IMG/VR virus record: IMGVR_UViG_3300028364_000014
Location: 62,001-126,000 of that record
Reading direction: 5' to 3' (one strand)
Length of the DNA: 64,000 nucleotides
The notes under the pieces were generated by a model, which had not been told where the DNA came from, did no database searches, and saw only the letters and a program-made list of their open reading frames with translations. Within the stretch, counting starts at the first letter, position 1. Every line of letters starts with the position of its first letter. This document shows, one piece after another, positions 692 to 54,536 of this stretch. Both the position numbers and the translations under genes were made by a program.

Positions 692-737
692 TCAATTATC
701 TGTTTGAGCAGGTACACAGGCCTTAAGCTCAAAGCGT

Positions 738-757
738 CGCCTCACTTCGGTGGGGCG
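738..757 (+). other. GC-rich hairpin with UUCG tetraloop
   Basis: cgcctcac-ttcg-gtggggcg, intergenic. Confidence 0.6.
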
Positions 758-814
758 GGTGGCAAAATGGACATTCCGTCCACAATTAAACCGTAATACA
801 TAGGAGATTACACC

Positions 815-1420
815 ATGACTAACATTATCAAAAAGAATGCTAAAGTACTTAACAATCGTGAACTTATAACTGGAATGGGCGCTAATGGTATTGTGCCCTC
901 TCTTAACAACAAAGGCACACTTATTTTTACTCATTGCCCTATGTGCGAAGCAGAGCTCCTTGCAGATAACCCTGGTTATACTAAAGCTATTCTTAGTAAT
1001 AAACCTTGGTATCAAGCTACGCCAGCTATTGTGTTCAAAATGCCTAATGGCTCTACTCTCAAGGCGTGCTGTTGTGGTTATAGAGAGCTAGTAATTATTA
1101 CACCTAAACCTAGGTGCTCTAACTGCGGTAGTGTTCTTAAGAACGAAGGGGACAGGTGCTATGGTCCTAACTGCCAGCCTCCTACACAACAGGAGCTGGA
1201 CTCCATTGCGACCGAGAAAAAGCAAGCTCAGGAGATAAAGGCTGCTGAATTGAAAGCCAAACAAGAGGCTAAGCAAAAAGCCACTAAACCTCCTGTCAAA
1301 CAGTGCGTAACTCCTGGATGTACAAACCCAGTGCCTGAGAGTCGTTTTGTTAGATGCGAGGCATGTCGTGCAACACGAAGAACCCCAAAGGAGGAGGCTT
1401 GTACTGAAGTTCAGATGTAA
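815..1420 (+). CDS. Cys-rich (zinc-binding) hypothetical protein
   Basis: RBS aggag; CPMC, CSNC, CVTPGC, CEAC motifs. Confidence 0.6.
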   Translation: MTNIIKKNAKVLNNRELITGMGANGIVPSLNNKGTLIFTHCPMCEAELLADNPGYTKAILSNKPWYQATPAIVFKMPNGSTLKACCCGYRELVIITPKPRCSNCGSVLKNEGDRCYGPNCQPPTQQELDSIATEKKQAQEIKAAELKAKQEAKQKATKPPVKQCVTPGCTNPVPESRFVRCEACRATRRTPKEEACTEVQM

Positions 1421-1597: not shown

Positions 1598-1641
1598 TGG
1601 GCACCTGAGTAATTAAGGTGTCCAAATTAAGGAGAATTATC
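1598..1641 (+). promoter_or_regulatory. Repeated hairpin+RBS leader module, copy 1
   Basis: tgggcacct-gagtaatta-aggtgtcca then aattaaggagaattatc ATG(1642). Confidence 0.75.
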
Positions 1642-1980
1642 ATGCAAAAAGCACTAAAAACTGTTAAACGAGCTACCTATGCACAAAAACGACAAGAGGC
1701 TTTTGATATGTTGAACAACACATATGAGGAAGAAGGTGTTCTTCTGTGCAGTGGGGAATTTAAAATCAATTCTCTGATGGCTATGATGATGGCAAGATCT
1801 GCTTTTAAAGAGACTTATGGAGCACTCGCCCCAAGGTACTTCAACATACCGGCTGACGAGCTTCCAGGAACTGAAGTACACCCAGGTGTATATATTTCAC
1901 GAGATGAGAATTCTCATTATTCTTTGGAGTACGAAGACGGTTTCCAAATGGAGGAATTTATTCAACAATGGGTATGTTAA
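1642..1980 (+). CDS. hypothetical protein
   Basis: ORF; start moved to ATG after RBS aaggag. Confidence 0.7.
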   Translation: MQKALKTVKRATYAQKRQEAFDMLNNTYEEEGVLLCSGEFKINSLMAMMMARSAFKETYGALAPRYFNIPADELPGTEVHPGVYISRDENSHYSLEYEDGFQMEEFIQQWVC

Positions 1981-2024
1981 ATAAATAAACAAGGGGCTCT
2001 GTATGAGCCCCATAAGGAGGCAAT

Positions 2025-2216
2025 ATGGGTAATTTAGATAAAATAGGAATGTGTTCCCACTGTAAACAGCTTTGTACACCTGTTGAATTGGATGAAGATA
2101 AAACTGAAGAAGTGGATTTCTTTGGTGTGGATAGCCTGTCTGAAGTAGACCAGTATATACTGGAAGGTGGAATTTTGTGCGAAAAATGCTACTCAAAAGA
2201 AGGCGGCATAGTATAA
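2025..2216 (+). CDS. small zinc-ribbon protein
   Basis: RBS aaggagg; CSHC...CEKC. Confidence 0.65.
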   Translation: MGNLDKIGMCSHCKQLCTPVELDEDKTEEVDFFGVDSLSEVDQYILEGGILCEKCYSKEGGIV

Positions 2217-2225
2217 ACCAAACAC

Positions 2226-2268
2226 AGGTGTTTGAATAACTCAGACATCTAAACCAAGGAGAAGTGAT
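2226..2268 (+). promoter_or_regulatory. Repeated hairpin+RBS leader module, copy 2
   Basis: aggtgtttga-ataac-tcagacatct then aaaccaaggagaagtgat ATG(2269). Confidence 0.7.
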
Positions 2269-2541
2269 ATGACACAGCGTACAGCAATGAACAACGACAA
2301 ACGAACAGAAGAGGCTACCACTGATTATACACTCCAATTTGAATTAAGGAAATTAGGTTATCGTCGCAAAGATAAACAAGTATGTGAAGCATGTATCGAA
2401 GAAATGGAATACAGCATGCAGTCCGTTGGTTATACAGGTACCAACCCTGCTTGGGCTAACCCAAGATGTGCATATAGATTCGAAAAAGAAGGGTCTTCTA
2501 TGATAGCCTGTAGGTGTGGTTGGAGAAAAACCATAGTTTAA
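2269..2541 (+). CDS. Cys-containing hypothetical protein
   Basis: ORF with RBS; CEAC, CRC. Confidence 0.65.
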   Translation: MTQRTAMNNDKRTEEATTDYTLQFELRKLGYRRKDKQVCEACIEEMEYSMQSVGYTGTNPAWANPRCAYRFEKEGSSMIACRCGWRKTIV

Positions 2542-2570
2542 ATAACACTATTTAATAGTTCCATAACTAA

Positions 2571-2614
2571 TAGGTGCCTGAATAACCAGGGCACCTAAAT
2601 CAAGGAGAATTACC
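2571..2614 (+). promoter_or_regulatory. Repeated hairpin+RBS leader module, copy 3
   Basis: taggtgcctgaataaccagggcaccta then aatcaaggagaattacc ATG(2615). Confidence 0.75.
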
Positions 2615-3220
2615 ATGATAAACAATGCCACTTTTACCCCAAACACTCTTGAAATACTTCCTGAATTCTGTGAACTATCCACCTTAACCTCATCGTTATT
2701 TGGTGATAACAATAGCTTAAGCTTTCAAAGTATTAAACTTAGTGCTGCTATTACCGTAAAAAAAGAGTACTTGGATGATTACTCACTTTCACATGACTGT
2801 AAAGCGTCAATATTGCGACAAACCAGAGACAGGATATCTGTACCAATAATACATTCTAATTTTGACTATGCTCTCAGTCGTGCGAGAGAATTTGATGGTA
2901 AGCTGTATTGTGGTAGCACTAACACAGTACGTTGGCAAGTAGAGTGGATAGAGCTACTTAGTAATTCCACTGGTAATGTGTATAAATTAAAGAGAATTAA
3001 AGACGAGTTACTTTGGCGCATGATGCTTATACAAGTGAATGGTGTGTCTATAGAGGACTCAGGGTTATCCTCGGTTGATTTAGAGGCAGTTCGTATGGAG
3101 CTAATGGATATAATTTACGTAATGTGCTTTCGTTTAAAAGGACATAGAGATAAAGGTAAAGTCTGTCAATCAAGGAAGATGCTTGAAGCGCAGCTCGAAG
3201 ACTTAAATACAGAAGTATAA
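2615..3220 (+). CDS. hypothetical protein
   Basis: ORF with strong RBS. Confidence 0.7.
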   Translation: MINNATFTPNTLEILPEFCELSTLTSSLFGDNNSLSFQSIKLSAAITVKKEYLDDYSLSHDCKASILRQTRDRISVPIIHSNFDYALSRAREFDGKLYCGSTNTVRWQVEWIELLSNSTGNVYKLKRIKDELLWRMMLIQVNGVSIEDSGLSSVDLEAVRMELMDIIYVMCFRLKGHRDKGKVCQSRKMLEAQLEDLNTEV

Positions 3221-3228
3221 TTTAAATA

Positions 3229-3273
3229 TGGGTGCTTGGATAATCCAGGCACCTAAAATCAAGGAGAATTATC
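3229..3273 (+). promoter_or_regulatory. Repeated hairpin+RBS leader module, copy 4
   Basis: tgggtgcttgga-taa-tccaggcaccta then aaatcaaggagaattatc ATG(3274). Confidence 0.75.
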
Positions 3274-3867
3274 ATGGGAGCAGATAGAACTCACCACAAC
3301 GCACACATGAAGAATGAGAATGCAGTAGCTGGAGTACGAATGACTGTTTGGGTTGCAGTGTATGATTTTTACAACCAGATGGGAATAAATTGGGACAATA
3401 TTGATGACTTGGTAAGCCCTTATGAGTATGGTAACACTAGATTCTCAGAAGCTTATCTTCTTCCTTTTTATTTCAAAAACCACTTTAATACGCGTAAAGC
3501 CACACAGATGATAGGATATGCTGGAAGCAATAACAGTCCTCTGGAGTTTCGACTCAAAAGGATGAACCTGCTGAACTTCATTGAGTTAGCCAGAGCACTG
3601 ATGCAAGCCAACATGATTACAAAAAAAGATATTCAAATTATTTTGGAAGCACCTTTCAAAAAGCGTAAAACAACAGGGAGAGGTCCGGAAAGCGGGGGAG
3701 TTTATAAATTCTACGCCAAAACACTTGTTGTTTCTTCCATCAATAAATGGGGAGGATTAAAGAACGCAGCAAGGCAGCTCGAAGTATCCTTGGATGTTGT
3801 TAAGTATTGGAGTACTTTAGTTGTTAAAGATATTAAAGTGAAACCCACCTCATCAGCAAGGAGATAA
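3274..3867 (+). CDS. hypothetical protein with C-terminal helix-turn-helix
   Basis: GGLKNAARQLEVSLDVVKYW is HTH-like. Confidence 0.55.
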   Translation: MGADRTHHNAHMKNENAVAGVRMTVWVAVYDFYNQMGINWDNIDDLVSPYEYGNTRFSEAYLLPFYFKNHFNTRKATQMIGYAGSNNSPLEFRLKRMNLLNFIELARALMQANMITKKDIQIILEAPFKKRKTTGRGPESGGVYKFYAKTLVVSSINKWGGLKNAARQLEVSLDVVKYWSTLVVKDIKVKPTSSARR

Positions 3868-4467: not shown

Positions 4468-4620
4468 ATCGACATTTGTTATTATGATACTATTTTACGG
4501 TAACCGCTTATTTCGTGTTTTAAGTCAGTACAATAACTCGCCCAACTAATGAAACGCCAGAAAGTGCCTGTAAGCAATTTGGAGATGTTTGACGGTAAAT
4601 GCAATTTATACCTACACCTT

Positions 4621-4650
4621 GGGGGACTAGCTTTTAAAAGTTAGTTCCCC
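4621..4650 (+). terminator. intergenic hairpin, possible terminator
   Basis: gggggactagctt-ttaa-aagttagttcccc; weak U-tract. Confidence 0.4.
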
Positions 4651-4963
4651 TTAGTGTTCTCGGAAGAGTGCCACCCACTGGCGCTGGCGCGTGTTCTCGG
4701 TATACTGAAAAACAAGCACCACTTCCGGGACAGTCCTGGATTCGGTAGCCTTCCCTGCTTGAAATCTCATATAGTCTGGAAGTCACGAGTACTGCCTAAG
4801 TATTAATCGTTCTACTAAACCAAAGGATTAAATTATGAGCACTAAACAATGGGTGTGGATGATGGACTACTGCAAAAAACAAAGCATTCCACCCGCAGAA
4901 TCCTGGGCTTGGGGAGATGCCAAGAAAGCCTATGAACTTTCCCGCTTGAAATCCTCTATAGTA

Positions 4964-5022
4964 GGGAGGCCGGGAGTACTGGAGTACCAGGAGGTTCTCG
5001 GGAGACAGGAGTATGAGGGAGA
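4964..5022 (+). repeat. GGAG-repeat cluster containing ccaggaggttctcgggagac
   Basis: 7 GGAG in ~60 nt; core repeated at 7790 and 35132. Confidence 0.7.
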
Positions 5023-5354: not shown

Positions 5355-5787
5355 TACCAACCAACCAAGGAGAAATACCCATGGCAAGAAATCGAAAGTA
5401 CGGAGCATCCCCAGCAGTCGTGCATTTTTTCAGAGAATGTAATACAGAAGTTGTAAAAATGATAGATGCCCGTGCATCAAAGCCAAAAGCCTGTGGTAAG
5501 GTTACAAGGATTAGCGATAATGTTATTAAACGGAGGAAGCTATATGTTTGAAACCCAAAAACTGATTGTTGATGAAAAGGGAGTATGTAGTCCCCCATAT
5601 AAAGTCATCCCATTAGAGAGGCTCTATCGACATATTCCAACGGCACGTAAGCTGTTGAGGCACAGGAGTATGATGCGGTTGAGTGCACCACCAGTAATAA
5701 AATCATTACCCCTATATATAGGGTAAAATTGATCACAAAGGGGGGCCGTAAGGTTCCCCACAACTAACCAAAGTAAGGAGATACACC

Positions 5788-7512
5788 ATGACAGAAGCAC
5801 AAACTCAAACCAATGAAGTACCGGCAGAAGAAGTTATTGAAGTTCATCAAACAGCAGATGAAGCAGCAGTAAAAGATTCATTTGGTAAAAATTTGACACT
5901 CACTGGTATGCAGACTCGTCAGACAGATACTGGTGATATTACCTTCTTCAATACTGATTATGTATCACCACGAGTACTTGATATCATCCAATGGTACTGC
6001 AATACTCAAGTTAGTGGATTCAATGGTCTCTATTCAGTCATTTTCAGAATGGATGGTCTTCCAAAAGTGGATGTACCTAGCGACACTCCAACATCCTGGA
6101 TGTTCTTCCCTGACACCCTTACTGCAGTATGTAATATCCGTGGGTGTATCGATGTAGCTCTATTTGAGGTAATGTCTGGAGATGTTAAAGAGGCTGCATG
6201 CATTAACACGTGGGCTGTCATTTGGCGCGCAATTGTGCAAAACTTCTTTCACGAAGCACACCATGCACAAACTTTCCTCAACGATAGAGAATTGCTCGAT
6301 TCCAAAGGGCAAAAAGGCTCCAAAGCCAGAGACGATGAAGAACAAGCGGCAATTGTATATGCTCAAACAATGATGATTGAAGCCGCTAAAGCATTAAACA
6401 TAGAACCTGAATTCACGCCTGAAGTAGCCGATATTATTCAGGATCGAATTGCGGATGAGATGGAAGCTATTGATGATGAATCACCCAGCCATCACAAACT
6501 ATGGGCGTCTAACATGAAGTATATGTTGAAACATGGATTCATCGTACATATCAAAACCGATGAAGGATATGAGGATAAAAGCTATTCCACGCTCAAAGAG
6601 TTTATGCATTCACAAAGTGGAGATGCTGAAAATGACCCAGCATGGCTAATCCAACATCCAGATACTACTTGTGTTGGTACAACTACTAACACAATAAACC
6701 CTATAGCAGACTCACCAGCTCCTGTAACCCAAACCGGTGGATTTATGTCTCCTCCTAATAACAACAATGGTTATGTCATTGAGGACGACGATTATAATGA
6801 TGATGATATTGATTATGGGCAAGCACAAAGTCCAACCAATACTATTCATGCTAACAACGCATACCAAACCCCTAACGCAAACGGTATGCAGGGAGCTGCA
6901 AATGTAGCAAACGGTTATGCTGGACCAAACACTACACCGCAAAATCCTGTAGCCGGTCCGCCTGCGCAGTTTAATCAGCCTGCTGTTGTTGGTGGGCAAT
7001 CCGCACAACCATTGAATTGGGACACTGGATACCACCAGGCAATAGTAAAAGGACTCTACCAGAAATTGGCTAATAACATCTTTGGTAAATGTCAGTTTAT
7101 AGTAGGACAAACAGCGAACACCCCATTCTTCATGAATGTTCCGGGTATTGAAGCACCACTACCCCTCAGCCCTGAAGAAGCACAACTGGTGATTGCCCAA
7201 ACCATTACCCAGAACGGTAAGTTCATGAAAGACCAACCTATGCAGAACAACGCTATCGGTGGTTGTACCATTGGTAAAGCAAAACTCATGCCTGGTTATG
7301 AATTGGTATTGAACAACGGACAAGGTGGTCAAATTCGTCGTAAATTCATTCCCCAAAATCCTTGGAAAACTTCCAAAACAGCAGAATGGGCACGTAACGG
7401 ACATCAGATTGTCTGGATTATTGACCCCGACGCCGCTGATAAATCTCTAAGTATGAGAGTAATGGGTGGTATAGTTGAAAGTAATCGAAGTGGACAGTGG
7501 GCAGCAGTCTAA
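5788..7512 (+). CDS. large hypothetical protein with HExxH motif and N/Q/P-rich linker
   Basis: RBS aaggag; FFHEAHHA followed by EEQAA. Confidence 0.6.
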   Translation: MTEAQTQTNEVPAEEVIEVHQTADEAAVKDSFGKNLTLTGMQTRQTDTGDITFFNTDYVSPRVLDIIQWYCNTQVSGFNGLYSVIFRMDGLPKVDVPSDTPTSWMFFPDTLTAVCNIRGCIDVALFEVMSGDVKEAACINTWAVIWRAIVQNFFHEAHHAQTFLNDRELLDSKGQKGSKARDDEEQAAIVYAQTMMIEAAKALNIEPEFTPEVADIIQDRIADEMEAIDDESPSHHKLWASNMKYMLKHGFIVHIKTDEGYEDKSYSTLKEFMHSQSGDAENDPAWLIQHPDTTCVGTTTNTINPIADSPAPVTQTGGFMSPPNNNNGYVIEDDDYNDDDIDYGQAQSPTNTIHANNAYQTPNANGMQGAANVANGYAGPNTTPQNPVAGPPAQFNQPAVVGGQSAQPLNWDTGYHQAIVKGLYQKLANNIFGKCQFIVGQTANTPFFMNVPGIEAPLPLSPEEAQLVIAQTITQNGKFMKDQPMQNNAIGGCTIGKAKLMPGYELVLNNGQGGQIRRKFIPQNPWKTSKTAEWARNGHQIVWIIDPDAADKSLSMRVMGGIVESNRSGQWAAV

Positions 7513-8875: not shown

Positions 8876-8919
8876 CCGGTAGGTCAGCTCAATAATGGGT
8901 TGGCTTACCGGGTTTTTTT
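8876..8919 (+). terminator. Rho-independent terminator
   Basis: ccggtaggtcagctca-ataa-tgggttggcttaccgg followed by T-run, directly after ssb. Confidence 0.85.
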
Positions 8920-9787: not shown

Positions 9788-10158
9788 TTTTTAAGTCTTT
9801 ATAATTAGATGAGACTATAAATATAATCTAATATACTTCTGGTTTAAACACCTAAGTATACGTGTTCTTTCATAGAGAACTCTCCTGAATAATAGGGATT
9901 AGTGCTTATAGGTTAAGTACTAGTCCCTATTTCTCCTTTTTAATTTTCCCCTGTTCCTTGTTTATTAATCCAATTAGTAAGAAATCCATCCAGTATAAAT
10001 ACTATGGTATCTGTTTTATTAAGTCCTTTCTCTTTCATATACATCTCCAATAAGGACTTGGTTATATTGTTTATTCTAAATGTTACACTACCTACCGATT
10101 TTTTTTCACTCATAATGTTGCTCCTATTATTACTACTATTATTAAATTACACCGTAAC

Positions 10159-10246
10159 TTACAGTGCATATTACAGTGTCTTACAGTGTATAACCCCCTA
10201 CCTATAGAAAAGTTAGTTAATTCAACTTACAGTGCTATTTACAGTG
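10159..10246. repeat. TTACAGTG direct repeats (5 copies)
   Basis: copies at 10159, 10171, 10181, 10227, 10239. Confidence 0.75.
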
Positions 10247-11199
10247 TAGATTACATTTACTCTAATTTACTCCCAGGGACTAAAACATGATACCCCCATA
10301 GGGGGGATTTGAGCCTTTTCTTACTCACTCACATCTACTGAAATCACTAATAGCTACCATTCATGGGGTTATACGCCTATCTGACCCAGGAGACCGCTTG
10401 TTCAGTATCTTAAACAAAAGAGGGTAAAGTAGAGCTTAGTGCCAGTATCTTTTGGCAAAAACACAAAAGGTGCCGTGATTAAGCTTCATTTTTTAACGAA
10501 ACTCATCGATTGACATCGAAAAGTATCGAATTCGACACAAAATCACTCATATTAGTTAAAAAGGGGGTATAATACCCTATATTGCCGTACTACCCACAGT
10601 GCATATTTGAGCCTTTTGCACACAGAGTTAAGTACTATAATCACTGTATCGCCGCTAATACCAGACCTCTTAGCCGTTTTTAGACAAACCGACAATTGAT
10701 TGAGGAAAAAGAATGAACTTAACCCACCAAATATCTATATCAACAATAACTATAATACTATCATGGATACTAGTAATAATAACCCTACTTCCATATACCA
10801 TTAATAGAGCTAAACCCTTAGTATTAGGCGCTATAGCTCTTGCAATCACTTCTTTCGGAGTACTTATCATATAAGAAGAAAAAGAAAAGGAGAAGACAGT
10901 GAGGAATAGACTAAGAGTGTTGGTACTTAGGGCTTTAGCACTAGAAAGGTCTGAACTAAAGTTATTGATACTTAAACTAATAATACTAGTTTGTATGGTT
11001 TTTATAGTACTATTTAGTTCAATACTAGGTATAACTTATATTATCTATGATATCAAGAGTACCGAGAATAGGGGCTCTCAATCAACTATTGAAATGTGTC
11101 GAAAATTATTATCGAAAAATATTGAAATCGATGAAACGTCGAAAAGTGTGTATTTCGGGCACCTTATAGATGTTAATAGAGATATAAGATAAAGATAAA

Positions 11200-19463: not shown

Positions 19464-20609
19464 ATGGCTGAACATAGATTAGTAACAATTGAAAAAATAA
19501 CTAAAGTTACTGAACATCCAAACGCGGACAAACTTGATATTGTAGATATACAAGGATGGCAATGTGTCACACAAAAAGGAGTATATAAAAAAAATGAAAT
19601 TGTAATATATTTTCATATTGATTCTATATTACCAGTAGACATCGAAAAAAGAATATTTGGTCCCGACGCAAAAATAACATTAAATAAACATAGAATACGT
19701 GCTATAAAAATACGCAGTATGCTTTCTTATGGACTAGTAGTACCGATAAGTCTTTTTAGTGATTTAATTAAAGATGAAAAAGTCAATGATGATGTTACAA
19801 ATATCTTTAAAGTTACAAAATACGAACCTATAATAAATAAAAAGAACATTTTATATGTAAATAGACAGAAAAAAAGATATGAAAATCCAAACTTTAAAAA
19901 AGTAAGAAAACCAGAAAGACTTTCAAACTATAAAGGGTGTTTTGATGGCAAAGAAGTAATGATAACTGAAAAAATCCATGGAACATCATGTAAAGTAGGC
20001 TGGGTTCTAAGACCTAACAATACTTGGAAAGAAAAACTTATTGTTAAACTTTTTGGTAATTATCAATTTGTATATAGAACTATGAAAGTACAATTACAAA
20101 AACATGACACGATCATGGATAAAATTTTAACTAAAATAGGAATAAGAAAATATAAAGGGTATTATAAAGATATAAATCATGGTAATGTTTATGCAAAAAT
20201 GGTTAATCAATATGAATTAAAAGAAATTATTTCATCTGGTTATGAAATAGCGTTTGAAATATATGGGAGTAGAATTCAAAAAAATTATACTTATGGATTA
20301 AAGCATAATGAACATAAAATGGTAGTATATGCAGTAATAAAAGATGGTAAATATTTACCTCCACATGATGCGTATGCTTTCTGTGAAATTCATAAATTAC
20401 CACATGTTCCTATATTATATATAGGCATATTCTCTAATGACGAACTGAATAGATGTACAGTTGGAGTAAGTGTATTAGATCCAAATACAAAAGTAAGAGA
20501 AGGATGTTGTATTGTACCACTAGACGGAAAACCATTATGGATGGGAAAAGAAGTAATGAAATCAATCAATCCATACTATGAACTTAAAAATCAAACAGAA
20601 TATAATTAA
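19464..20609 (+). CDS. RNA ligase, Rnl2/DRB0094 family with N-terminal OB domain
   Basis: HPNADKLD N-terminus, motif I TEKIHGTS, FEIYG..IQKNY, REG, KSINP. Confidence 0.85.
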   Translation: MAEHRLVTIEKITKVTEHPNADKLDIVDIQGWQCVTQKGVYKKNEIVIYFHIDSILPVDIEKRIFGPDAKITLNKHRIRAIKIRSMLSYGLVVPISLFSDLIKDEKVNDDVTNIFKVTKYEPIINKKNILYVNRQKKRYENPNFKKVRKPERLSNYKGCFDGKEVMITEKIHGTSCKVGWVLRPNNTWKEKLIVKLFGNYQFVYRTMKVQLQKHDTIMDKILTKIGIRKYKGYYKDINHGNVYAKMVNQYELKEIISSGYEIAFEIYGSRIQKNYTYGLKHNEHKMVVYAVIKDGKYLPPHDAYAFCEIHKLPHVPILYIGIFSNDELNRCTVGVSVLDPNTKVREGCCIVPLDGKPLWMGKEVMKSINPYYELKNQTEYN

Positions 20610-35588: not shown

Positions 35589-35715
35589 GTTAATGCGGCA
35601 CTTTGGTATAGAGGGTTACATATACCCTTTCTAATCTACTTGTCTATAAAGACCTACTTGGGAAGATTATAAAAGTTAGATTAATATAAACTTGTTCTTA
35701 AAAGGAGAACCGAAA

Positions 35716-37338
35716 ATGGATTACACCAAACATTTTTCAGCTAAGAAAACACCACAAACACAAGCAATCCCTGGTAAAAAGATGATTAAAAACGCAGCAG
35801 GGGGCTTTGGTTTTAAAGTCTCGCCCATGCATCAATTGGAAAGATTTTTAATTCTTGGTACAGAGGGAGGCTCTTATTATGCTGGTGAACATGAGATGAC
35901 TATTGACAACGCAACTAACCTTGTTGCTACCATTAAAAATGAAGGAGTTAGGGTTGTAGATAAAATATTGGAAATTTCTGATTCAGGTAGAGCCCCAAAG
36001 AATAATGCAGCTCTTTTTGCATTGGCTGTATGTACATCACCAGAGATTGCTGATGTAGAAACAAGAAGAGCCGCTTTTAAAGCGTTACCTAAGATAGCTA
36101 GGATAAGTACCCATCTTTTTCAATTCATTGATTATATGAAACATTTCAGAGGATTTGGGAAGCTAGCACAACAAGGAGTACAGGATTGGTATCAGCTAAA
36201 AGATGCAAAACAGTTAGAATTTCAGATGGTTAAATATCGTCAACGCTTAGGGTGGACACATAATGACGTACTACGCCTTGCTAAGCCAGTACCAATCTCC
36301 CATGAACATGATCAATTATATGAGTTTGCAAAGAATGGTGTTATTGAAAGTGAACACCAATTCAATTTGATTGAAGGATTCATTAGAATCCAACAAGCAG
36401 AGACAGTAAAGGAGGCTGTAAAGCTTATTAGTGACTTTAGGCTACCGATGGAAACTGTTCCAACACAATTCAAAAAAGATCCTGCAATATGGGAAGCATT
36501 GTTGCCACAACTACCAATTACTGCCACCATCCGTAACTTGAGAAACATGGCTAAATCTGGATTTCTTACTCAATTTAGTGATGCTTCTAAGACAGTTGCA
36601 GATAGAATTGCTAGTCCTGAAGGCATTAGAAAAGGTAGAGTACACCCAATTCAGTTTCTTAATGCTATTTTAAATTACCCTATAGGTAAAGTAAGACTTG
36701 TAGGTTCTGCCTTTGGGAATATTGGACATGCTGTTGATAGTGAGTTCCCTGTATGTACTAATGTAACTGAAGCATTAAATGAAGGATTTCATCTTGGTTT
36801 TGGTAATGTAACACCATCCAACAAAAATACTATGTTGGCTTTGGATATTTCAGGGTCAATGGGTTGGAATTGGGCTATCGGTATGAAAGGAATAACACCA
36901 GCCGAAGCTTCTGCTGCTATGGCTTTAATTACAGTTAATGTTGAGCCTAATCATATGATAGGGGTATTTGAGGGAACTTTTAAACCATTTAATAAAATAA
37001 AAAAGGGTATGCAAGTTGATGCTGCTGTAAAAGCGCTAAAAGGGTTACCTTTTGGAGGTACTGATTTAGCATCCCCGATTTATTGGGCTTTAGCGAATAA
37101 AGTACCTGTTGATATGTTTCAATGTTATACAGATAATGAAACTTGGGCTGGTAGTATACATCCATCACAAGCTCTTGATAATTTTTGTGTTAAAATGGGA
37201 CGTCCTGCAAAATTTGCATCAGTCGCTATGACAGCCACTGAAAATTCAGTTGCAGACCCTAATAACCCTCAAATGCTGGATATAATAGGCTTCGATACAG
37301 CTACCCCTGAGATATTATCACGTTTTGCAGAAATGTAA
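35716..37338 (+). CDS. Ro60/Rsr TROVE-VWA RNA-binding protein
   Basis: NAAGGFGF, RFLILGTEGGSYY, KYRQR.GW.H.D.LRL, ALDISGSM MIDAS, TDNETW. Confidence 0.92.
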   Translation: MDYTKHFSAKKTPQTQAIPGKKMIKNAAGGFGFKVSPMHQLERFLILGTEGGSYYAGEHEMTIDNATNLVATIKNEGVRVVDKILEISDSGRAPKNNAALFALAVCTSPEIADVETRRAAFKALPKIARISTHLFQFIDYMKHFRGFGKLAQQGVQDWYQLKDAKQLEFQMVKYRQRLGWTHNDVLRLAKPVPISHEHDQLYEFAKNGVIESEHQFNLIEGFIRIQQAETVKEAVKLISDFRLPMETVPTQFKKDPAIWEALLPQLPITATIRNLRNMAKSGFLTQFSDASKTVADRIASPEGIRKGRVHPIQFLNAILNYPIGKVRLVGSAFGNIGHAVDSEFPVCTNVTEALNEGFHLGFGNVTPSNKNTMLALDISGSMGWNWAIGMKGITPAEASAAMALITVNVEPNHMIGVFEGTFKPFNKIKKGMQVDAAVKALKGLPFGGTDLASPIYWALANKVPVDMFQCYTDNETWAGSIHPSQALDNFCVKMGRPAKFASVAMTATENSVADPNNPQMLDIIGFDTATPEILSRFAEM

Positions 37339-50169: not shown

Positions 50170-51033
50170 ATGCTTATGACTGTTGGGACTAAAGTAGAAG
50201 TAATTGCTTCTACTATTAAAAAAAAGGGAGCTAAACCAAGGGCTGGCAGTCAAGGGTATTGTATAACGAGTGATAAACTTTGTCATATAAATGGACCTAA
50301 TGTAATAGCGGTACCTGCTTCTATTGTTTTTACAAAATTTGGACATCAAACTAAACGTAGAAGTGAATTAAAAAATGTATGCCTTATATACCCTAAAGAT
50401 AAAAGACCAATAAAAAATGTTAAACCATACTTAAATAAATTATTAAAAAACACAAAAGACTATGCATCAATAAATTTTATTATGCGTTCCCTTTGTAATA
50501 AAAAAATGACATCAGCAACAGACTTAATGATAATTAAACCAATAGTAACTTCAGAGAATATCAAAAATTCATCAAACGAATTTAATTCTTGGTTAAGATG
50601 TGTTCTTTATAGTACTAAAGTACGTCAACTATTTATAAGTAAATATAAGGATGAAAGAGCCCTTGTAAGTAAAAATTTTCTAAAAGGATTACCCTTTTCT
50701 ACTGATGTTTTAATAGATATAATTCGCAATAAACATAAATTTATAAAATTAGCAAGTTTTCTATTTAAACACCCGTATAATAAAGTATTAATGAAAAATA
50801 TCGCAGGACTAAATCAATATTTGTTACAAGACGCCATTAATAAAGCAGTATACCAATTAACCGTTACATGGAAAACTGAACAAAATGTAATTAATTCGGC
50901 ATTAACATTAGGTAATTTAGATAGACACTTAACTCAGAAGGAGATAGAGAAATTTAAAGTTCGGTTAAGTCCATCGGCACTTCATGCCTATGAGACTGTA
51001 TGGAACTGGTTAGACGTATTAAAAACATTATAA
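50170..51033 (+). CDS. hypothetical protein, probable paralog of previous gene
   Basis: VGTKVEV...AGSQGY...KFGHQTKRR...EFNSWL. Confidence 0.65.
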   Translation: MLMTVGTKVEVIASTIKKKGAKPRAGSQGYCITSDKLCHINGPNVIAVPASIVFTKFGHQTKRRSELKNVCLIYPKDKRPIKNVKPYLNKLLKNTKDYASINFIMRSLCNKKMTSATDLMIIKPIVTSENIKNSSNEFNSWLRCVLYSTKVRQLFISKYKDERALVSKNFLKGLPFSTDVLIDIIRNKHKFIKLASFLFKHPYNKVLMKNIAGLNQYLLQDAINKAVYQLTVTWKTEQNVINSALTLGNLDRHLTQKEIEKFKVRLSPSALHAYETVWNWLDVLKTL

Positions 51034-51068
51034 AATCAGTAAATGCTATTAAAGGGAGATCAATATCC

Positions 51069-54000
51069 ATGACCAGTATTGAAATAACTACACAAGTAGA
51101 AACTATGGCAAATTTGATTAGAGACCAATTTACTTCTAGAACAGAGATTGAAGGTCGTAGGACTGGTAAAGATTTTCGTGGTGCTAAAATGGATATCACT
51201 TTTACTAATGGTCAAATGTGGATTACTGTTGTATTAGAAGATGAAGCACATACTATTACTGTGCCCATTCCTTATATCGAAAATGGGGTTGAATTAATTA
51301 AATCCAATGAAGTTAAACGATCAATATGCAAACATTTTGACGTTACGAATAATATTGAAATTTCATATCTGGATGTTATTCAAAAAATCTTCATTGGTGA
51401 CCCTATTGGGCTTGTTACTAATATAAAAGTAAAGAAAAGTTCCTTTGTTCAACAAATTGCTTATTCAATTTTAAATAAAAATACCTCCATTATCATATAT
51501 AATCTTCAAAAAGCAATCAGTGAAATTGTTAATAAAATGCCTTTACATGAGACATTTATGAACAGTTATATCATGAACCAAAGACTTATGATGGTAGATC
51601 CGGTATTTAATCGTATGTCTTCTCCACAAGATCTTTTAGATTATCAAATCGATAAAAATAAGTATTATTTCAATAACGGATGGACATCTGTTGGATTATC
51701 GGATGGAACTCTTGCGAATAAGAATTATATTTTAAAGAAAGATATCAAAGCTTTAACGGTGTTTGGTATACATCACCATAACCCGCAAAGAAATCTATTT
51801 TCAACCCTTGGTATGAGAGGAGATGAGCTCCCACAATTAAGGTCAGCTTCTGCACAAGAGTTGATTGAATCAGGCATTACACGCACAGGTTGGAATCTGT
51901 TTACTCTTTTTGCGGATGTTCCAGATAATTTTGAGGATCAAGTATTAGTGGATATTTCTCACAAAGATAAAGCTATTATTTCTGAACGGAGATTCCAATG
52001 CTTTGGAGAGATTCTGGTAAAAGAAGGGCAAAGAATTAAATTAGGTGATTCATTAGTTAAATGTTCAGATGGTGAAATTACTTCTTATCAAGTAAAAGCT
52101 GACGAGTCCTGGATACACAAGATTATTAAATCTCACACAGTAGTTGGAGGTGTTAAAACTGAGGTTTATAATGTACTTATAAAATTTAAAAGATTTCTTA
52201 AAGATGCGACTAAACTTACCAACACTCATGGTAATAAGGGTGTAATTAGATTATTTGATCTTGGGTATGCAATTGATCCGGCTACAGGTAAACCCCGTAA
52301 GATAGATGTTATTGTGTCAGCTAAATCTGTAAAGAGACGTAAAAATTATGGTCAAATATTTGAAGCTTTAGTAAATGTAGTACATGAACGTAATACTGCT
52401 GAAGTAAATACACCAGAAATAAGTTCTATCAGTAATTGGTCAAAAAGAGGAGTTGCAGTTACTTCTAAAATTACCTCTAAAGTATTACCAATTAAACCGT
52501 TAATATATGCAGACAATTATACATTCGATGATGAAAAAGAAGCGCAGCTTAAACAAAACTTGATAGATTCTGGTATACCCGAGGATGGTACTTGGAGATG
52601 TGATACTTATGTTGGAGAAATCTACGGAGTTTGTGGTACGGTATTCTGGGGGGTTACCAAAGAACCTGAAGATCAATTGTGGGCAGAGGGGGCTACTGAA
52701 AGAACCAATGGTAAAGATCTTAGAGTTGCTGGTTTAAAATTTTCAACTGTAGAATTTAAAGCACTGGAAACACATTTTGGTATTGACAATGCTGTGTCAA
52801 GAGAAGTTCTTTCTTATACACAAGGTATTGAAAATATTGATGAAACTCTACAGATTCTTAGAAGTCAGTTTGGAATTATTACCAAAAATGTACCAACAAA
52901 GAAAGTATATGAAATAAAATCCGTTGATCAGAGTAACGGTACTATTTTTACTAAAGAATCTTTACTAGATACAGTAGCAGATGAAAATATGTTGAGGGAT
53001 GGGTTTATTTTACATTTACCTGTACAATTTCAAACTGCTGTAGGAATAAAGAACAGTGATTCTTATGAAGGTGCTCCAGTATTTGATCCCGCTATGATGG
53101 ACTGGTCTGTGTTTAAAGTATTATATACTACCGATAAGATATACATTCCAGAAGGCAGTATGCGTAGAAATTGGCGACATAGTACTGGTATGTACGGCAT
53201 GAGTGAAATAGCTGTATTAATAAATAATATTATTATGTTTTCTAATAATTATCTTGCAGAGCCGAATGAGGCCCATCATATTAGAATGTTGTATAACGCA
53301 CTTAGAAATTATTTCTTTAGAATGTCTAGTTCTGTAGGTACAAAGAAAGGAGATGTATCTAGTTATGCGATGTCAGTAAGATATCCTTATTCAGCTAAAG
53401 CTGTTGCAACACTATCTACTACAATACCACCACAAACAATCCAAATTCATAGTGATATGGCAAATTCTCTTAAAGTGACTGAAGGAGATGTAGTAATAGT
53501 TGAAAGGTTCCCTTGTCTTGGTTTTATGGGAATACGTCCTCAAAAAGTAACAATAACAGATGATCCAATGTGTAAATACACAATCAGAGCATCAGGCAAT
53601 AGTTTAGTATCTACTAATTTAGATTTTGATGGTGATGTGATTTATATTGCGGCTTTTCATACACCAGAGGCAGTGGCATTACTACAAAAAGAGTGGCTTA
53701 CTCCTAATCCCGAAACTTGGAAATATATCGATCAATTGAATAAACGAAAGGGAGAACCTTGCATTAATCTTTTAAGTCTCCCTGAGTACGAAATGACTCC
53801 TTTTACAGCCCTAACTTGTGAGGACCAAGCAGGTATTGTTAGAAAATTAACAGGAGTTAAAGCACAAACAGGTCCTGTAATTGCAATGGCCTATAATATC
53901 ATGCGTATTATGGAAAATTCAGGTAATGAGTTAACTAATGCCCAGCAAGCATCTATCGAAATGTTTATTGAAAAGACAGGACAATCTGTATTTGAGCAAA

Positions 54001-54536
54001 AACATGGTGGCATTTCATTGTGTGAAATTGTACTTGAAGCTGTATGTACGGGTGATATTGACACACTAGTAAAAGAAGGTTATGATGCAGAAGTAACTAC
54101 TCTTATCTGTAAAACCATTGATAGAAAAGCCAAGAGTATAGGAATCAATGACCTTAAAGATTATCATTACAAAATAGGTATCCACGGTTCCAATATTGTA
54201 AATCGCATTGTGAAAACTGAAAATAAAGTCTATTTTGCGAGCCGTTCAGATTTAGATACCTATAGTCTTTTAGAATGCCTTTCTTCACCGGTTGTGGATC
54301 TCCCTAGTCGTATATTTGCACTTACTATGTCTGGTAAATACAATAACGAACGTAATTTCTTGATTGAGGAAAAAGAAAGAAAGATGTTATCAGCAATTAA
54401 AGATGATGATTTGAGAAAAGGTTGTACAGATTTGTTTGGACTTATTGATAAAATGATGGGTAATGTTAAAAAAGGAGCAACAATTAGCAATAATGTTAGG
54501 CTAGGTTCTTGCTTGTTGAAAAAAAGTATAAAATAA
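51069..54536 (+). CDS. single-chain two-barrel DNA-dependent RNA polymerase (beta-like + beta'-like)
   Basis: beta-like HHNPQRNL, NFEDQV, TKLTNTHGNKGV, IDVIV; beta'-like VERFPCL and NLDFDGD; start at ATG after gggag. Confidence 0.88.
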   Translation: MTSIEITTQVETMANLIRDQFTSRTEIEGRRTGKDFRGAKMDITFTNGQMWITVVLEDEAHTITVPIPYIENGVELIKSNEVKRSICKHFDVTNNIEISYLDVIQKIFIGDPIGLVTNIKVKKSSFVQQIAYSILNKNTSIIIYNLQKAISEIVNKMPLHETFMNSYIMNQRLMMVDPVFNRMSSPQDLLDYQIDKNKYYFNNGWTSVGLSDGTLANKNYILKKDIKALTVFGIHHHNPQRNLFSTLGMRGDELPQLRSASAQELIESGITRTGWNLFTLFADVPDNFEDQVLVDISHKDKAIISERRFQCFGEILVKEGQRIKLGDSLVKCSDGEITSYQVKADESWIHKIIKSHTVVGGVKTEVYNVLIKFKRFLKDATKLTNTHGNKGVIRLFDLGYAIDPATGKPRKIDVIVSAKSVKRRKNYGQIFEALVNVVHERNTAEVNTPEISSISNWSKRGVAVTSKITSKVLPIKPLIYADNYTFDDEKEAQLKQNLIDSGIPEDGTWRCDTYVGEIYGVCGTVFWGVTKEPEDQLWAEGATERTNGKDLRVAGLKFSTVEFKALETHFGIDNAVSREVLSYTQGIENIDETLQILRSQFGIITKNVPTKKVYEIKSVDQSNGTIFTKESLLDTVADENMLRDGFILHLPVQFQTAVGIKNSDSYEGAPVFDPAMMDWSVFKVLYTTDKIYIPEGSMRRNWRHSTGMYGMSEIAVLINNIIMFSNNYLAEPNEAHHIRMLYNALRNYFFRMSSSVGTKKGDVSSYAMSVRYPYSAKAVATLSTTIPPQTIQIHSDMANSLKVTEGDVVIVERFPCLGFMGIRPQKVTITDDPMCKYTIRASGNSLVSTNLDFDGDVIYIAAFHTPEAVALLQKEWLTPNPETWKYIDQLNKRKGEPCINLLSLPEYEMTPFTALTCEDQAGIVRKLTGVKAQTGPVIAMAYNIMRIMENSGNELTNAQQASIEMFIEKTGQSVFEQKHGGISLCEIVLEAVCTGDIDTLVKEGYDAEVTTLICKTIDRKAKSIGINDLKDYHYKIGIHGSNIVNRIVKTENKVYFASRSDLDTYSLLECLSSPVVDLPSRIFALTMSGKYNNERNFLIEEKERKMLSAIKDDDLRKGCTDLFGLIDKMMGNVKKGATISNNVRLGSCLLKKSIK

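What the first reader, a model, noticed from the sequence alone, without database searches (positions are those of the whole stretch)
1598..3273. Repeated covarying hairpin+RBS module heading early-type genes
Seen: four leaders (1598, 2226, 2571, 3229) share a 9-12 bp stem around a TGRRTAAY-like core, then A-rich spacer and AAGGAGAA, with ATG 17-18 nt after the stem. Copy 1 has swapped arms (gggcacc/ggtgtcc vs ggtgcc/ggcacc) yet still pairs, so structure is conserved. No U-tract follows. Looser hairpin+RBS units occur at ~1993 and ~5740. Inference: hairpin promoters for the phage RNAP (by analogy with N4 virion RNAP), mRNA processing/stabilising stems, or cassette-shuffling sites like the PeSL elements of T4-like phages.
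Basis: partly seen in the sequence, partly recalled or inferred. Interest (0 to 1): 0.72.

Follow-up and report, generated by a model that had tools for sequence, protein, structure and literature searches.

The report
Repeated intercistronic RNA hairpin in phage
Four copies of a conserved RNA stem-loop sit between small genes of a 238-kb lake phage, in an operon whose other gene junctions hold self-cleaving ribozymes; they most likely control mRNA processing or stability, and one pair has mediated loss or gain of a gene in wild populations.

Summary
Four about 45-nt modules (hairpin, A-rich spacer, AAGGAGAA, ATG 17-18 nt after the stem) lie at window 1598, 2226, 2571 and 3229. They are the only four in the 238-kb genome, against 0.06 expected by chance.

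The hairpin is a real family. Five more members head or flank homologous genes in four unrelated metagenomic phage lineages. Across the nine hairpins, 8 of 10 stem pairs show compensatory changes. All 12 non-Watson-Crick pairs are G.U on the sense strand, with no A.C, which points to an RNA structure in the mRNA rather than a DNA palindrome or a template-strand hairpin.

The setting is a GC-richer island of orphan genes with no host-type promoters. Its other stop-to-RBS slots hold a near-threshold hammerhead match, two pistols and a weak twister-like match. The four relatives' contigs with real context also carry ribozyme matches.

Natural strains differ by exactly one unit (spacer, 201-aa gene, hairpin), with the crossover in the 10 nt that copies 3 and 4 share.

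Best reading: an intercistronic mRNA processing or stability stem-loop that also serves as a homology patch for cassette gain or loss. An N4-type hairpin promoter, an intrinsic terminator and a strict PeSL are not supported. No RNA data exist, so the RNA-level mechanism is inferred.

The parts
1598..1644 (+). Module copy 1: hairpin 1598-1624 (arms GGGCACC / GGTGTCC, the 'swapped' type), SD 1629-1636, ATG 1642; heads a 112-aa orphan gene (1642-1980)
2226..2271 (+). Module copy 2: hairpin 2226-2250 (10 bp, two G.U pairs), SD 2256-2263, ATG 2269; heads a 90-aa gene (2269-2541)
2571..2617 (+). Module copy 3: hairpin 2571-2597, SD 2602-2609, ATG 2615; heads the 201-aa orphan gene 2615-3220
3229..3276 (+). 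Module copy 4: hairpin 3229-3255 (12 bp), SD 3261-3268, ATG 3274; heads a 197-aa gene (3274-3867) with about 60 distant homologues and weak HTH signals
2590..3247 (+). 658-nt presence/absence unit (spacer and SD of copy 3, gene 2615-3220, hairpin of copy 4). It is absent from most strain contigs. The crossover lies in the 10 nt GGCACCTAAA shared by copies 3 and 4
1993..2011 (+). Unrelated 7-bp G/C hairpin in the same slot, 13 nt before the ATG of the 63-aa gene 2025-2216
5740..5759 (+). G-run/C-run hairpin, then ACAAC and an SD, before the 574-aa gene 5788-7512. A 34%-identical homologue on another contig (L024) has a different hairpin followed by the same ACAAC and an SD
698..764 (+). Pistol self-cleaving ribozyme in the equivalent stop-to-RBS slot before gene 815-1420; context for the modules

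Best explanation
The modules are copies of a sense-strand RNA stem-loop family. Its arms are built on GGYRCC, and a U.G wobble sits a few pairs above the base in eight of nine members. The hairpins occupy the short spacers between cistrons of a long plus-strand transcription unit of small orphan genes.

In that unit every junction seems to need an RNA device. Some junctions carry self-cleaving ribozymes (a near-threshold hammerhead match, two pistols, a weak twister-like match). The four junctions studied here carry this hairpin.

My reading of the mechanism is as follows. The hairpin forms in the mRNA just after the upstream stop codon. It acts as a decay barrier or processing landmark, protecting the 3' end of the upstream cistron and/or forming a structured 5' end for the downstream one after cleavage in the AU-rich flanks. 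It also keeps the A-rich spacer and the strong Shine-Dalgarno single-stranded whatever gene lies upstream.

Because the whole 45-nt module is repeated in direct orientation, it is also a patch of homology. Recombination between copies 3 and 4 has removed or added exactly one gene in wild populations.

Shown: the structure, its strand bias, its conservation and covariation, its position, the ribozyme neighbourhood, and the recombination junction. Inferred: that it acts on stability, processing or translation, and which nuclease is involved.
For: Structure and strand.
- The nine family members have 94 predicted pairs: 82 Watson-Crick, 12 G.U and 0 mismatches on the sense strand. The antisense fold is weaker in 8 of 9.
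- On alignment A4, 87.5% of cells pair. Eight of 10 pairs change on both sides. No shuffle out of 500 reaches the observed score. The score is 0.63 against at most 0.26 when the partners are slid.

Conservation.
- Hairpins with the same arms stand directly before homologues of gene 3274 (35-41% identity) in L033, L035 and L037, and before nearby genes in L037 and L039.

Position.
- The hairpin starts 5-14 nt after the upstream stop codon in 8 of 9 cases.
- No T-tract follows, and no promoter-like or terminator-like site is called at the modules.

Context.
- The same island holds a hammerhead II match (36.6 bits, just under the 37-bit gathering score), pistols at 71.3 and 49 bits, and a weak twister-P1 match (24.5 bits against a 67.2-bit gathering score) in equivalent slots.
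- Relatives' contigs carry pistol (L037, two copies; L039), hammerhead II (L038) and a sub-threshold twister-P1 match (L033, 38 bits).
- In strain L022 the hammerhead slot holds a different structured leader.
- The island has no host-type promoter. The first plus-strand terminator-like sites are at window 4621-4650 and 8876-8911, consistent with long polycistronic transcripts.
- A review notes that phage-associated ribozymes have been proposed to process polycistronic transcripts (PMC6765202).

Recombination.
- Ten strain contigs (L006-L009, L012, L014-L016, L018, L022) and runs X3 and X16 lack 658 nt. Their junction joins the copy-3 hairpin to the copy-4 spacer.

Not duplication.
- The four downstream genes are not paralogues.
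Against: - No transcript data: no RNA run holding this phage was listed. No 5' or 3' end, cleavage or stability effect has been seen.
- The fixed 17-18 nt from stem to ATG holds only within this phage. It is 26-39 nt in relatives, so tight coupling to the ribosome-binding site is not a family feature.
- Two homologues of gene 3274 (L038, L039) have no room for a hairpin directly upstream.
- All strain variants of this phage carry identical modules. The covariation therefore rests on nine sequences from five lineages, some of them related.
- The family's link to a gene with weak HTH signals leaves protein-binding explanations open.
Confidence: 0.5

Rival explanations
1. RNA operator. The hairpin, with its conserved GGYRCC arms, U.G wobble and AUAAC-type loop, is the binding site of a phage protein that represses translation, cleaves the RNA or modifies the polymerase. 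Comparable known pairs are lambda N with boxB, T4 RegA, or Cas6-type hairpin nucleases. Under this reading the four genes form a small regulon.
For: - Sequence as well as structure is conserved between phages whose adjacent proteins are only 35-41% identical.
- A U.G wobble sits at an equivalent height in 8 of 9 members.
- The family is repeatedly found beside homologues of gene 3274, which has a confident but unmatched fold (pLDDT 91.7).
Against: - No RNA-binding domain was recognised in the island proteins.
- The loops differ widely between the two arm types (UGAAUAAC against AUGG or ACGG).
- The complex prediction was not run by the tool.
- This rival is compatible with the best explanation, not exclusive of it.
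Confidence: 0.17
2. PeSL-like composite signal. Each module is a weak -10-only promoter overlapping the upstream stop codon (AGTATAAT before copy 4, AGTATAAA before copy 2), followed by a stem-loop. The stem-loop attenuates read-through and forms the 5' end of a new transcript.
For: - TATAAT-like hexamers end about 7 nt before the hairpin base in copies 2 and 4, and TTAAAT in copy 1.
- CATAGTATAAT recurs in other plus-strand intergenic regions.
- PeSL stem-loops without U-tracts terminate efficiently, and PeSLs mediate indels (PMC2839356).
- An indel maps to the module.
Against: - No site with both hexamers is called at any module, and promoter-like sites in the region are not enriched (45 found against 44.6 in shuffles).
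- Copy 3 and several relatives lack a good -10 box.
- The phage's genuine strong promoters have a clear -35 and -10 and occur elsewhere.
- AT-rich stop-codon contexts produce TATAAT-like strings by chance.
Confidence: 0.13
3. Double-stranded DNA operator. The inverted repeat is bound by a dimeric helix-turn-helix protein, perhaps the gene 3274 product regulating itself and its neighbours.
For: - Family members of gene 3274 give weak HTH hits: HTH_23, MerR, Cro, and the terminase small-subunit HTH at E 0.003.
- Hairpins precede four of the six homologues whose upstream context was examined; a seventh, L034, sits on a 700-nt contig with only 47 nt upstream.
- Palindromes also co-vary.
Against: - For a DNA palindrome, G.T and A.C asymmetries should be equally common. 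Observed: 12 G.U and 0 A.C on the sense strand.
- The two arm types are not interconvertible by inversion.
- Spacing between the arms varies from 3 to 9 nt.
- The HTH hits are all below family cut-offs, and the fold search gave nothing at E below 0.7.
Confidence: 0.08
4. Factor-independent terminators or pause sites, for the host or the phage RNA polymerase.
For: Stable GC-rich hairpins directly after stop codons.
Against: - An A-rich rather than U-rich 3' flank in all four copies, and no consistent U-tract in relatives.
- None is called by the terminator scan.
- Four terminators within 1.7 kb, each 17 nt before a strong RBS, would silence the genes they head.
Confidence: 0.06
5. N4-type single-stranded hairpin promoters for a phage RNA polymerase.
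For: Hairpins at a fixed distance before genes. The genome has an ORF (window 51000-54536) with weak similarity to beta and beta' segments of multisubunit polymerases.
Against: - The geometry is wrong (9-13 bp stems, variable loops), and the hairpin is weak on the template strand.
- The only polymerase-like ORF is of the multisubunit type, not the T7/N4 type.
- No PF00940 match (control silent).
- N4 features are taken from PMC4496689.
Confidence: 0.02

Closest known systems
PeSL (promoter-early stem-loop) cassettes of T4-type phages (Arbiol et al. 2010, PMC2839356; Comeau et al. 2014, PMC4122927)
   Same: - Repeated short intergenic motifs with a stem-loop and a Shine-Dalgarno at the 3' end.
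- Concentrated before orphan genes in a plastic region.
- Indels between close strains have their breakpoints in the motif.
   Different: - No sigma-70-type promoter in the module.
- No T4 capsid or portal Pfam match in the genome, although those searches' control genomes were silent too.
- Only four copies instead of about 50.
- The neighbouring slots hold ribozymes.
Intercistronic RNase III sites of phage T7 early mRNA and of Bacillus phage SP82 early mRNA (Panganiban & Whiteley 1983, cited in PMC4838370)
   Same: From my own knowledge: sequence-related hairpins repeated between cistrons of a phage polycistronic mRNA, just upstream of ribosome-binding sites, whose cleavage leaves protective hairpins.
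   Different: - Stems here are 9-13 bp without the internal loop and about two helical turns typical of RNase III substrates.
- No cleavage has been shown.
- No phage RNase III gene was found.
Self-cleaving ribozymes used as intercistronic processors or insulators (phage-associated hammerhead, twister and pistol; synthetic RiboJ)
   Same: They occupy the same stop-to-RBS slot in the same operon. They are expected to uncouple a cistron's leader from upstream sequence.
   Different: A plain hairpin has no known catalytic core. It matches no Rfam family. Any cleavage would need a protein nuclease.
Lambda-type nut boxB hairpins
   Same: From my own knowledge: a short conserved RNA hairpin in early leaders, and a loop resembling CUGAAnAA.
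   Different: Longer stem, no boxA identified, no N-like arginine-rich protein identified. Not tested further.

Membership tests
PeSL (T4-type promoter-early stem-loop) | Strong sigma-70-like -35 and -10 promoter within the motif | tested here: not met
   No promoter-like site at any module. The phage's own strong host-type promoters all lie elsewhere.
PeSL (T4-type promoter-early stem-loop) | Stable stem-loop, with an SD and start codon at the 3' end, upstream of orphan genes in a hyperplastic region | tested here: met
   (gene 2615 has no homologue).
PeSL (T4-type promoter-early stem-loop) | Indels between close relatives with breakpoints in the motif | tested here: met
   One event: the 658-nt unit, with its junction in the shared 10 nt.
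PeSL (T4-type promoter-early stem-loop) | Host genome is a T4-type phage | tested here: inconclusive
   No Gp23 or T4-portal Pfam match, but the control genomes were silent as well.
N4 virion-RNAP hairpin promoter | 5-7 bp stem around a GC-rich heptamer centred at -11, with conserved -17 to +1 | tested here: not met
   Stems are 9-13 bp and loops 3-9 nt of varied sequence. Definition from PMC4496689.
N4 virion-RNAP hairpin promoter | The hairpin forms on the template strand | tested here: not met
   The template-strand fold is 5-7 kcal/mol weaker in c1, c2 and c4, and weaker in 8 of 9 family members.
N4 virion-RNAP hairpin promoter | The phage encodes a T7-like single-subunit virion RNA polymerase | tested here: inconclusive
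   No PF00940 match in the genome. The control was silent, and the record is estimated 87% complete.
Intrinsic (rho-independent) terminator | GC-rich hairpin immediately followed by a U-tract | tested here: not met
   The 3' flanks are A-rich. None was called by the scan.
RNase III processing site (T7 R1.1 / SP82 type) | About 20 bp of coaxial duplex, often with an internal loop; cleavage by RNase III | tested here: inconclusive
   The stems are only 9-13 bp. Cleavage is not testable here.
Any Rfam 15 family | Covariance-model match | tested here: not met
   No match at the modules at gathering scores or at E up to 1.

The most novel reading that the evidence does not exclude
In these phage islands every intercistronic junction must be cut. 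The slot can be filled interchangeably by a hammerhead, pistol, twister or HDV-like ribozyme, or by this GGYRCC hairpin. The hairpin would then be the protein-dependent member of the set: the recognition site of a dedicated, still unidentified phage- or host-encoded endonuclease or RNA-binding factor, possibly the product of the conserved adjacent 197-aa gene. This would give phage self-cleaving ribozymes a defined biological role, namely modular and portable cistron boundaries.
Probability: 0.2. Interest if true: 0.8.

Novelty: new variant of a known kind. Interest (0 to 1): 0.55.

Why it matters
Why phages carry clusters of self-cleaving ribozymes is an open question. Here a protein-free device (a ribozyme) and a plain conserved hairpin occupy equivalent gene junctions in one operon, and the same association recurs in four other phage lineages.

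That makes a concrete hypothesis testable with simple reporters and RNA end-mapping: these elements are interchangeable cistron boundaries that make orphan-gene cassettes portable.

The natural one-gene polymorphism at the module also shows how such leaders drive gene turnover in a wild phage population.

Tried and rejected
Searches for relatives and RNA data that gave nothing useful
- Nucleotide searches of the phage collection found nothing, in both near and distant modes.
- Exact-pattern scans for the module in viral and metagenome contigs returned only this phage's own populations plus chance hits without hairpins.
- Protein-seeded scans of viral contigs with gene 3274, the polymerase-like ORF, P0021 and P0022 found no relatives. 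The alignment A3 was too divergent for that tool.
- Gene 2615 has no homologue anywhere.
- No RNA run was listed.
- Pattern scans for the two arm types in viral contigs returned unrelated elements: a promoter-proximal terminator-like hairpin in gut phages, and coding regions of GC-rich phages. They were discarded.
- The protein-DNA complex job was not folded by the tool and gives no evidence.

Ideas considered and dropped
- Tandem gene duplication as the source of the repeat: the four genes are not paralogues.
- A pseudoknot between the loop and the region around the start codon: complementary only in c1 and c4, by reading the sequence.
- Inversion as the origin of the swapped arms: a palindrome keeps its arms on inversion.
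- Integron attC-like sites: no resemblance in size or motifs, and no integrase was looked for.
- A loop that supplies stop codons in all three frames: true only for c1.
Full report
**What the window is.** The window is bases 62,001-126,000 of a single 237,910-bp virus record with 33% GC. It was assembled from lake and salt-lake metagenomes, and CheckV estimates it 87% complete.
- GC skew flips at about genome 58 kb, roughly 3.5 kb before the window starts.
- The first 14 kb or so of the plus-strand block (genome 58-72 kb) has 38-44% GC, against about 30% elsewhere.
- The finding lies in this island. The island is packed with small genes that have no family assignment.

- Each folds into one hairpin of 9-12 bp. 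AAGGAGAA begins 4-5 nt after the stem, and the ATG follows 17-18 nt after the stem.
- The fixed-spacing pattern matches three copies in the window, against 0.06 expected by chance. The fourth copy differs by one extra A in the spacer.
- A covariance model of the four scores them at 70-75 bits. The next best place in the whole genome scores 23.6 bits. There are therefore exactly four copies, all within 1.7 kb.
- The four genes they head are not paralogues, so gene duplication does not explain the repeat.
- Among the four copies, 4 of 8 stem pairs change on both sides and every cell stays paired.

**The hairpin is a family that extends beyond this phage.** Strain variants from about a dozen other assemblies are 99% identical and carry identical modules, so they add no covariation. 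An exhaustive protein search with the 197-aa gene behind copy 4 found about 60 homologues at 25-43% identity. I examined the contigs of six of them.
- Three have a hairpin with the same GGYRCC-type arms directly upstream: L033 1859-1881, L035 1221-1247 and L037 5830-5855.
- Two more such hairpins stand before nearby genes: L037 4865-4894 and L039 3272-3293.
- Two homologues (L038, L039) follow the preceding gene too closely to have a hairpin directly upstream.
- The sixth (L034) is a 700-nt contig with only 47 nt upstream and shows no hairpin.

Both arm orientations occur: GUGCC...GGCAC as in copies 2-4, and GGCAC...GUGCC as in copy 1.

On the nine-sequence alignment A4, 87.5% of cells pair even though two rows are misaligned by one column. 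Eight of 10 pairs show changes on both sides. No shuffle out of 500 reaches the observed score. Sliding the partners drops the score from 0.63 to at most 0.26.

**RNA or DNA, and which strand?** The nine predicted stems contain 82 Watson-Crick pairs, 12 G.U pairs and no mismatch when read on the coding strand. On the other strand every G.U becomes a C.A mismatch, and the fold is weaker in 8 of 9 cases, typically by 4-8 kcal/mol.
- A double-stranded palindromic protein site has no reason to prefer G.T over A.C asymmetries.
- A template-strand hairpin of the N4 type would prefer the opposite bias.
- Some of the wobbles are shared by descent, so the count overstates the number of independent events. 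Even five or six independent events, all in one direction, are unlikely by chance.
- A U.G wobble also sits at an equivalent height in eight of the nine stems.

I take this as good evidence that the structure matters in the sense transcript.

**Position.** The hairpin begins 5-14 nt after the upstream stop codon in eight of nine cases. The distance to the downstream ATG is 17-18 nt in this phage but 26-39 nt in the relatives. No U-tract follows, and neither the promoter scan nor the terminator scan calls the modules.

**The neighbourhood is the most telling clue.** In the same island, the equivalent stop-to-RBS slots of other genes match self-cleaving ribozyme families.

| Element | Place | Score |
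|---|---|---|
| Hammerhead type II | L001 3962-4028 | 36.6 bits, just under the 37-bit gathering score |
| Pistol | L001 4433-4501 | 71.3 bits |
| Twister-P1-like | L001 5823-5882 | 24.5 bits, far below the 67.2-bit gathering score |
| Pistol | window 698-764 | 49 bits |

(L001 coordinate minus 6727 gives the window coordinate)

- The four relatives' contigs with real context also carry ribozyme matches: two pistols in L037, a pistol in L039, a hammerhead II in L038 and a sub-threshold twister-P1 match in L033.
- In a more divergent strain (L022), the hammerhead slot is filled by an unrelated leader of about 130 nt. By my own reading it can be drawn as an HDV-like nested fold. Its only Rfam signal is 13.4 bits, and its fold energy is no better than that of shuffled sequence (z -0.86).
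- The island contains none of the phage's roughly 20 strong host-type promoters; all of those lie on the minus-strand arms.
- The first plus-strand terminator-like hairpins with T-runs are at window 4621-4650 and 8876-8911.

The simplest picture is a long polycistronic transcript whose junctions each carry an RNA device. It has been suggested that phage-associated ribozymes process polycistronic mRNAs (PMC6765202).

**Recombination.** Ten strain contigs lack gene 2615-3220. They align to the window up to 2617 and again from 3228, overlapping by the length of the module.
- Their single junction module consists of the hairpin of copy 3 joined to the spacer of copy 4.
- Laying contigs of four further runs gave the same 658-nt skip, with 10 nt of ambiguity, in X3 and X16. 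X4 and X20 keep the gene, and X3 holds both forms.
- Gene 2615 is on 5 contigs, against 22-31 for its neighbours' clusters, and it has no homologue anywhere.
- However, another strain (L017) has an extra gene of about 70 aa inserted elsewhere in the island, with junctions in bare Shine-Dalgarno repeats and no hairpin.

Repeated leader sequence of any kind seems to be enough. I regard the shuffling as a consequence of the repeat rather than its purpose.

**What it most likely does.** I read it as an intercistronic stem-loop acting in the mRNA. It would block exonucleases, mark a processing site in the AU-rich flanks, and keep the strong ribosome-binding site exposed whatever lies upstream. This is the protein-dependent or passive counterpart of the ribozymes next door. 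The reading is inferred from anatomy and context, and I put it at about 0.5.
- The main rival is that the hairpin is the binding site of a specific protein on RNA. That rival could coexist with the best explanation.
- Gene 3274 gives weak helix-turn-helix hits and has a confident but unmatched predicted fold. This keeps a DNA-operator reading alive, at low probability because of the strand bias.
- A weak -10-only promoter overlapping the stop codon (AGTATAAT before copy 4, AGTATAAA before copy 2) cannot be excluded.

**Comparison with known systems.**
- It works like the PeSLs of T4-type phages in that it marks plastic orphan-gene junctions and mediates indels. It lacks their defining promoter, so I do not file it as one.
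- From my own knowledge, it resembles the repeated RNase III sites of T7 and SP82 early mRNAs in placement. Its stems are too short for a typical RNase III substrate, and no cleavage is known.
- It is not an N4-type promoter (for the definition).
- It is not an intrinsic terminator.
- It matches nothing in Rfam 15.

I rate it a new variant of a known kind.

**Limits.**
- There are no RNA data of any sort.
- The family comprises nine sequences from five lineages.
- The host is unknown.
- The polymerase-like ORF at 51000-54536 matches beta and beta' segments only weakly (E 1e-4 to 2e-6, below the Pfam cut-offs).

Noticed in passing
window 698-764; L001 3962-4028, 4433-4501, 5823-5882 (window = L001 minus 6727): A ribozyme-rich operon. 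Two pistol ribozymes (49 and 71.3 bits), a hammerhead type II match just under its gathering score (36.6 against 37 bits) and a weak twister-P1-like element (24.5 bits) each sit between a stop codon and the next ribosome-binding site, within 3.6 kb.
   Followed up: partly
L022 1590-1720 (contig Ga0136555_1000208), orthologous to L001 3957-4055: In a strain about 94% identical in this region, the hammerhead slot holds an unrelated structured leader. By manual reading it can be drawn as an HDV-like fold: P1 AUCCUAC/GUAGGAU, P2 AUAAAAC/GUUUAAU, P3 GCC/GGC, P1.1 CC/GG, a P4 hairpin, and J4/2 CUAA. Rfam gives only 13.4 bits to an HDV-like family, and the fold energy is no better than that of shuffled sequence (z -0.86). 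This may be a swap of ribozyme class at one gene junction.
   Followed up: partly
L033, L037, L038, L039 (metagenomic phage contigs carrying homologues of gene 3274): All four relatives' contigs with real context also carry pistol, hammerhead II or (sub-threshold, 38 bits) twister-P1 matches, together with DUF488-N3a and Macro-domain genes. This island type recurs in otherwise unrelated phages.
   Followed up: partly
L017 (reverse strand) 1535-1753, against genome 60847-60863 (window about -1150): Another strain has an extra ORF of about 70 aa inserted between two small genes, with both junctions inside Shine-Dalgarno repeats. This is cassette gain or loss without any hairpin.
   Followed up: yes
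genome 43-54 kb and 165-231 kb, minus strand: About 20 near-identical strong host-type promoters (A-rich upstream, CTTGACAAA, about 17 bp, a TG-extended TATATTAT). None lies in the plus-strand island, so host-polymerase early genes are probably on the arms rather than here.
   Followed up: partly
L001 3305-3426 (window about -3420 to -3300), at the strand switch: A tandem array of a 31-bp unit (3.9 copies, built of two related 15-16-bp halves starting AGTACTAA) lies in the divergent intergenic region. It may be a set of binding sites for a regulator or a replication protein.
   Followed up: no
window 4468-4834 and 4937-4981: A 367-nt non-coding gap holds a 13-bp terminator-like hairpin (4621-4650). 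A 45-nt segment (4750-4794) is repeated at 76% identity inside the next small ORF.
   Followed up: no
window 19464-20609 and 35692-37338: The phage encodes an RNA ligase (PF09414 with a PHA02142 OB domain) and a Ro60/TROVE RNA-binding protein. A tRNA-rich region also seems to lie downstream of the window; that is only my reading of intergenic sequence, and no tRNA scan was run. These RNA-repair and RNA-quality functions may relate to the many RNA ends the ribozymes create.
   Followed up: no
window 9942-10487, against L006 8088-8840: Strain contigs carry a different segment here, with a T5orf172/MUG113-type gene on the minus strand. This is another variable spot at the edge of the island.
   Followed up: no
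window 824-1135: One contig in run X3 suggests a variant in which the gene behind the second pistol differs from 10 nt after its ATG. Support is weak (23 nt on one side) and may come from paralogous leaders.
   Followed up: no
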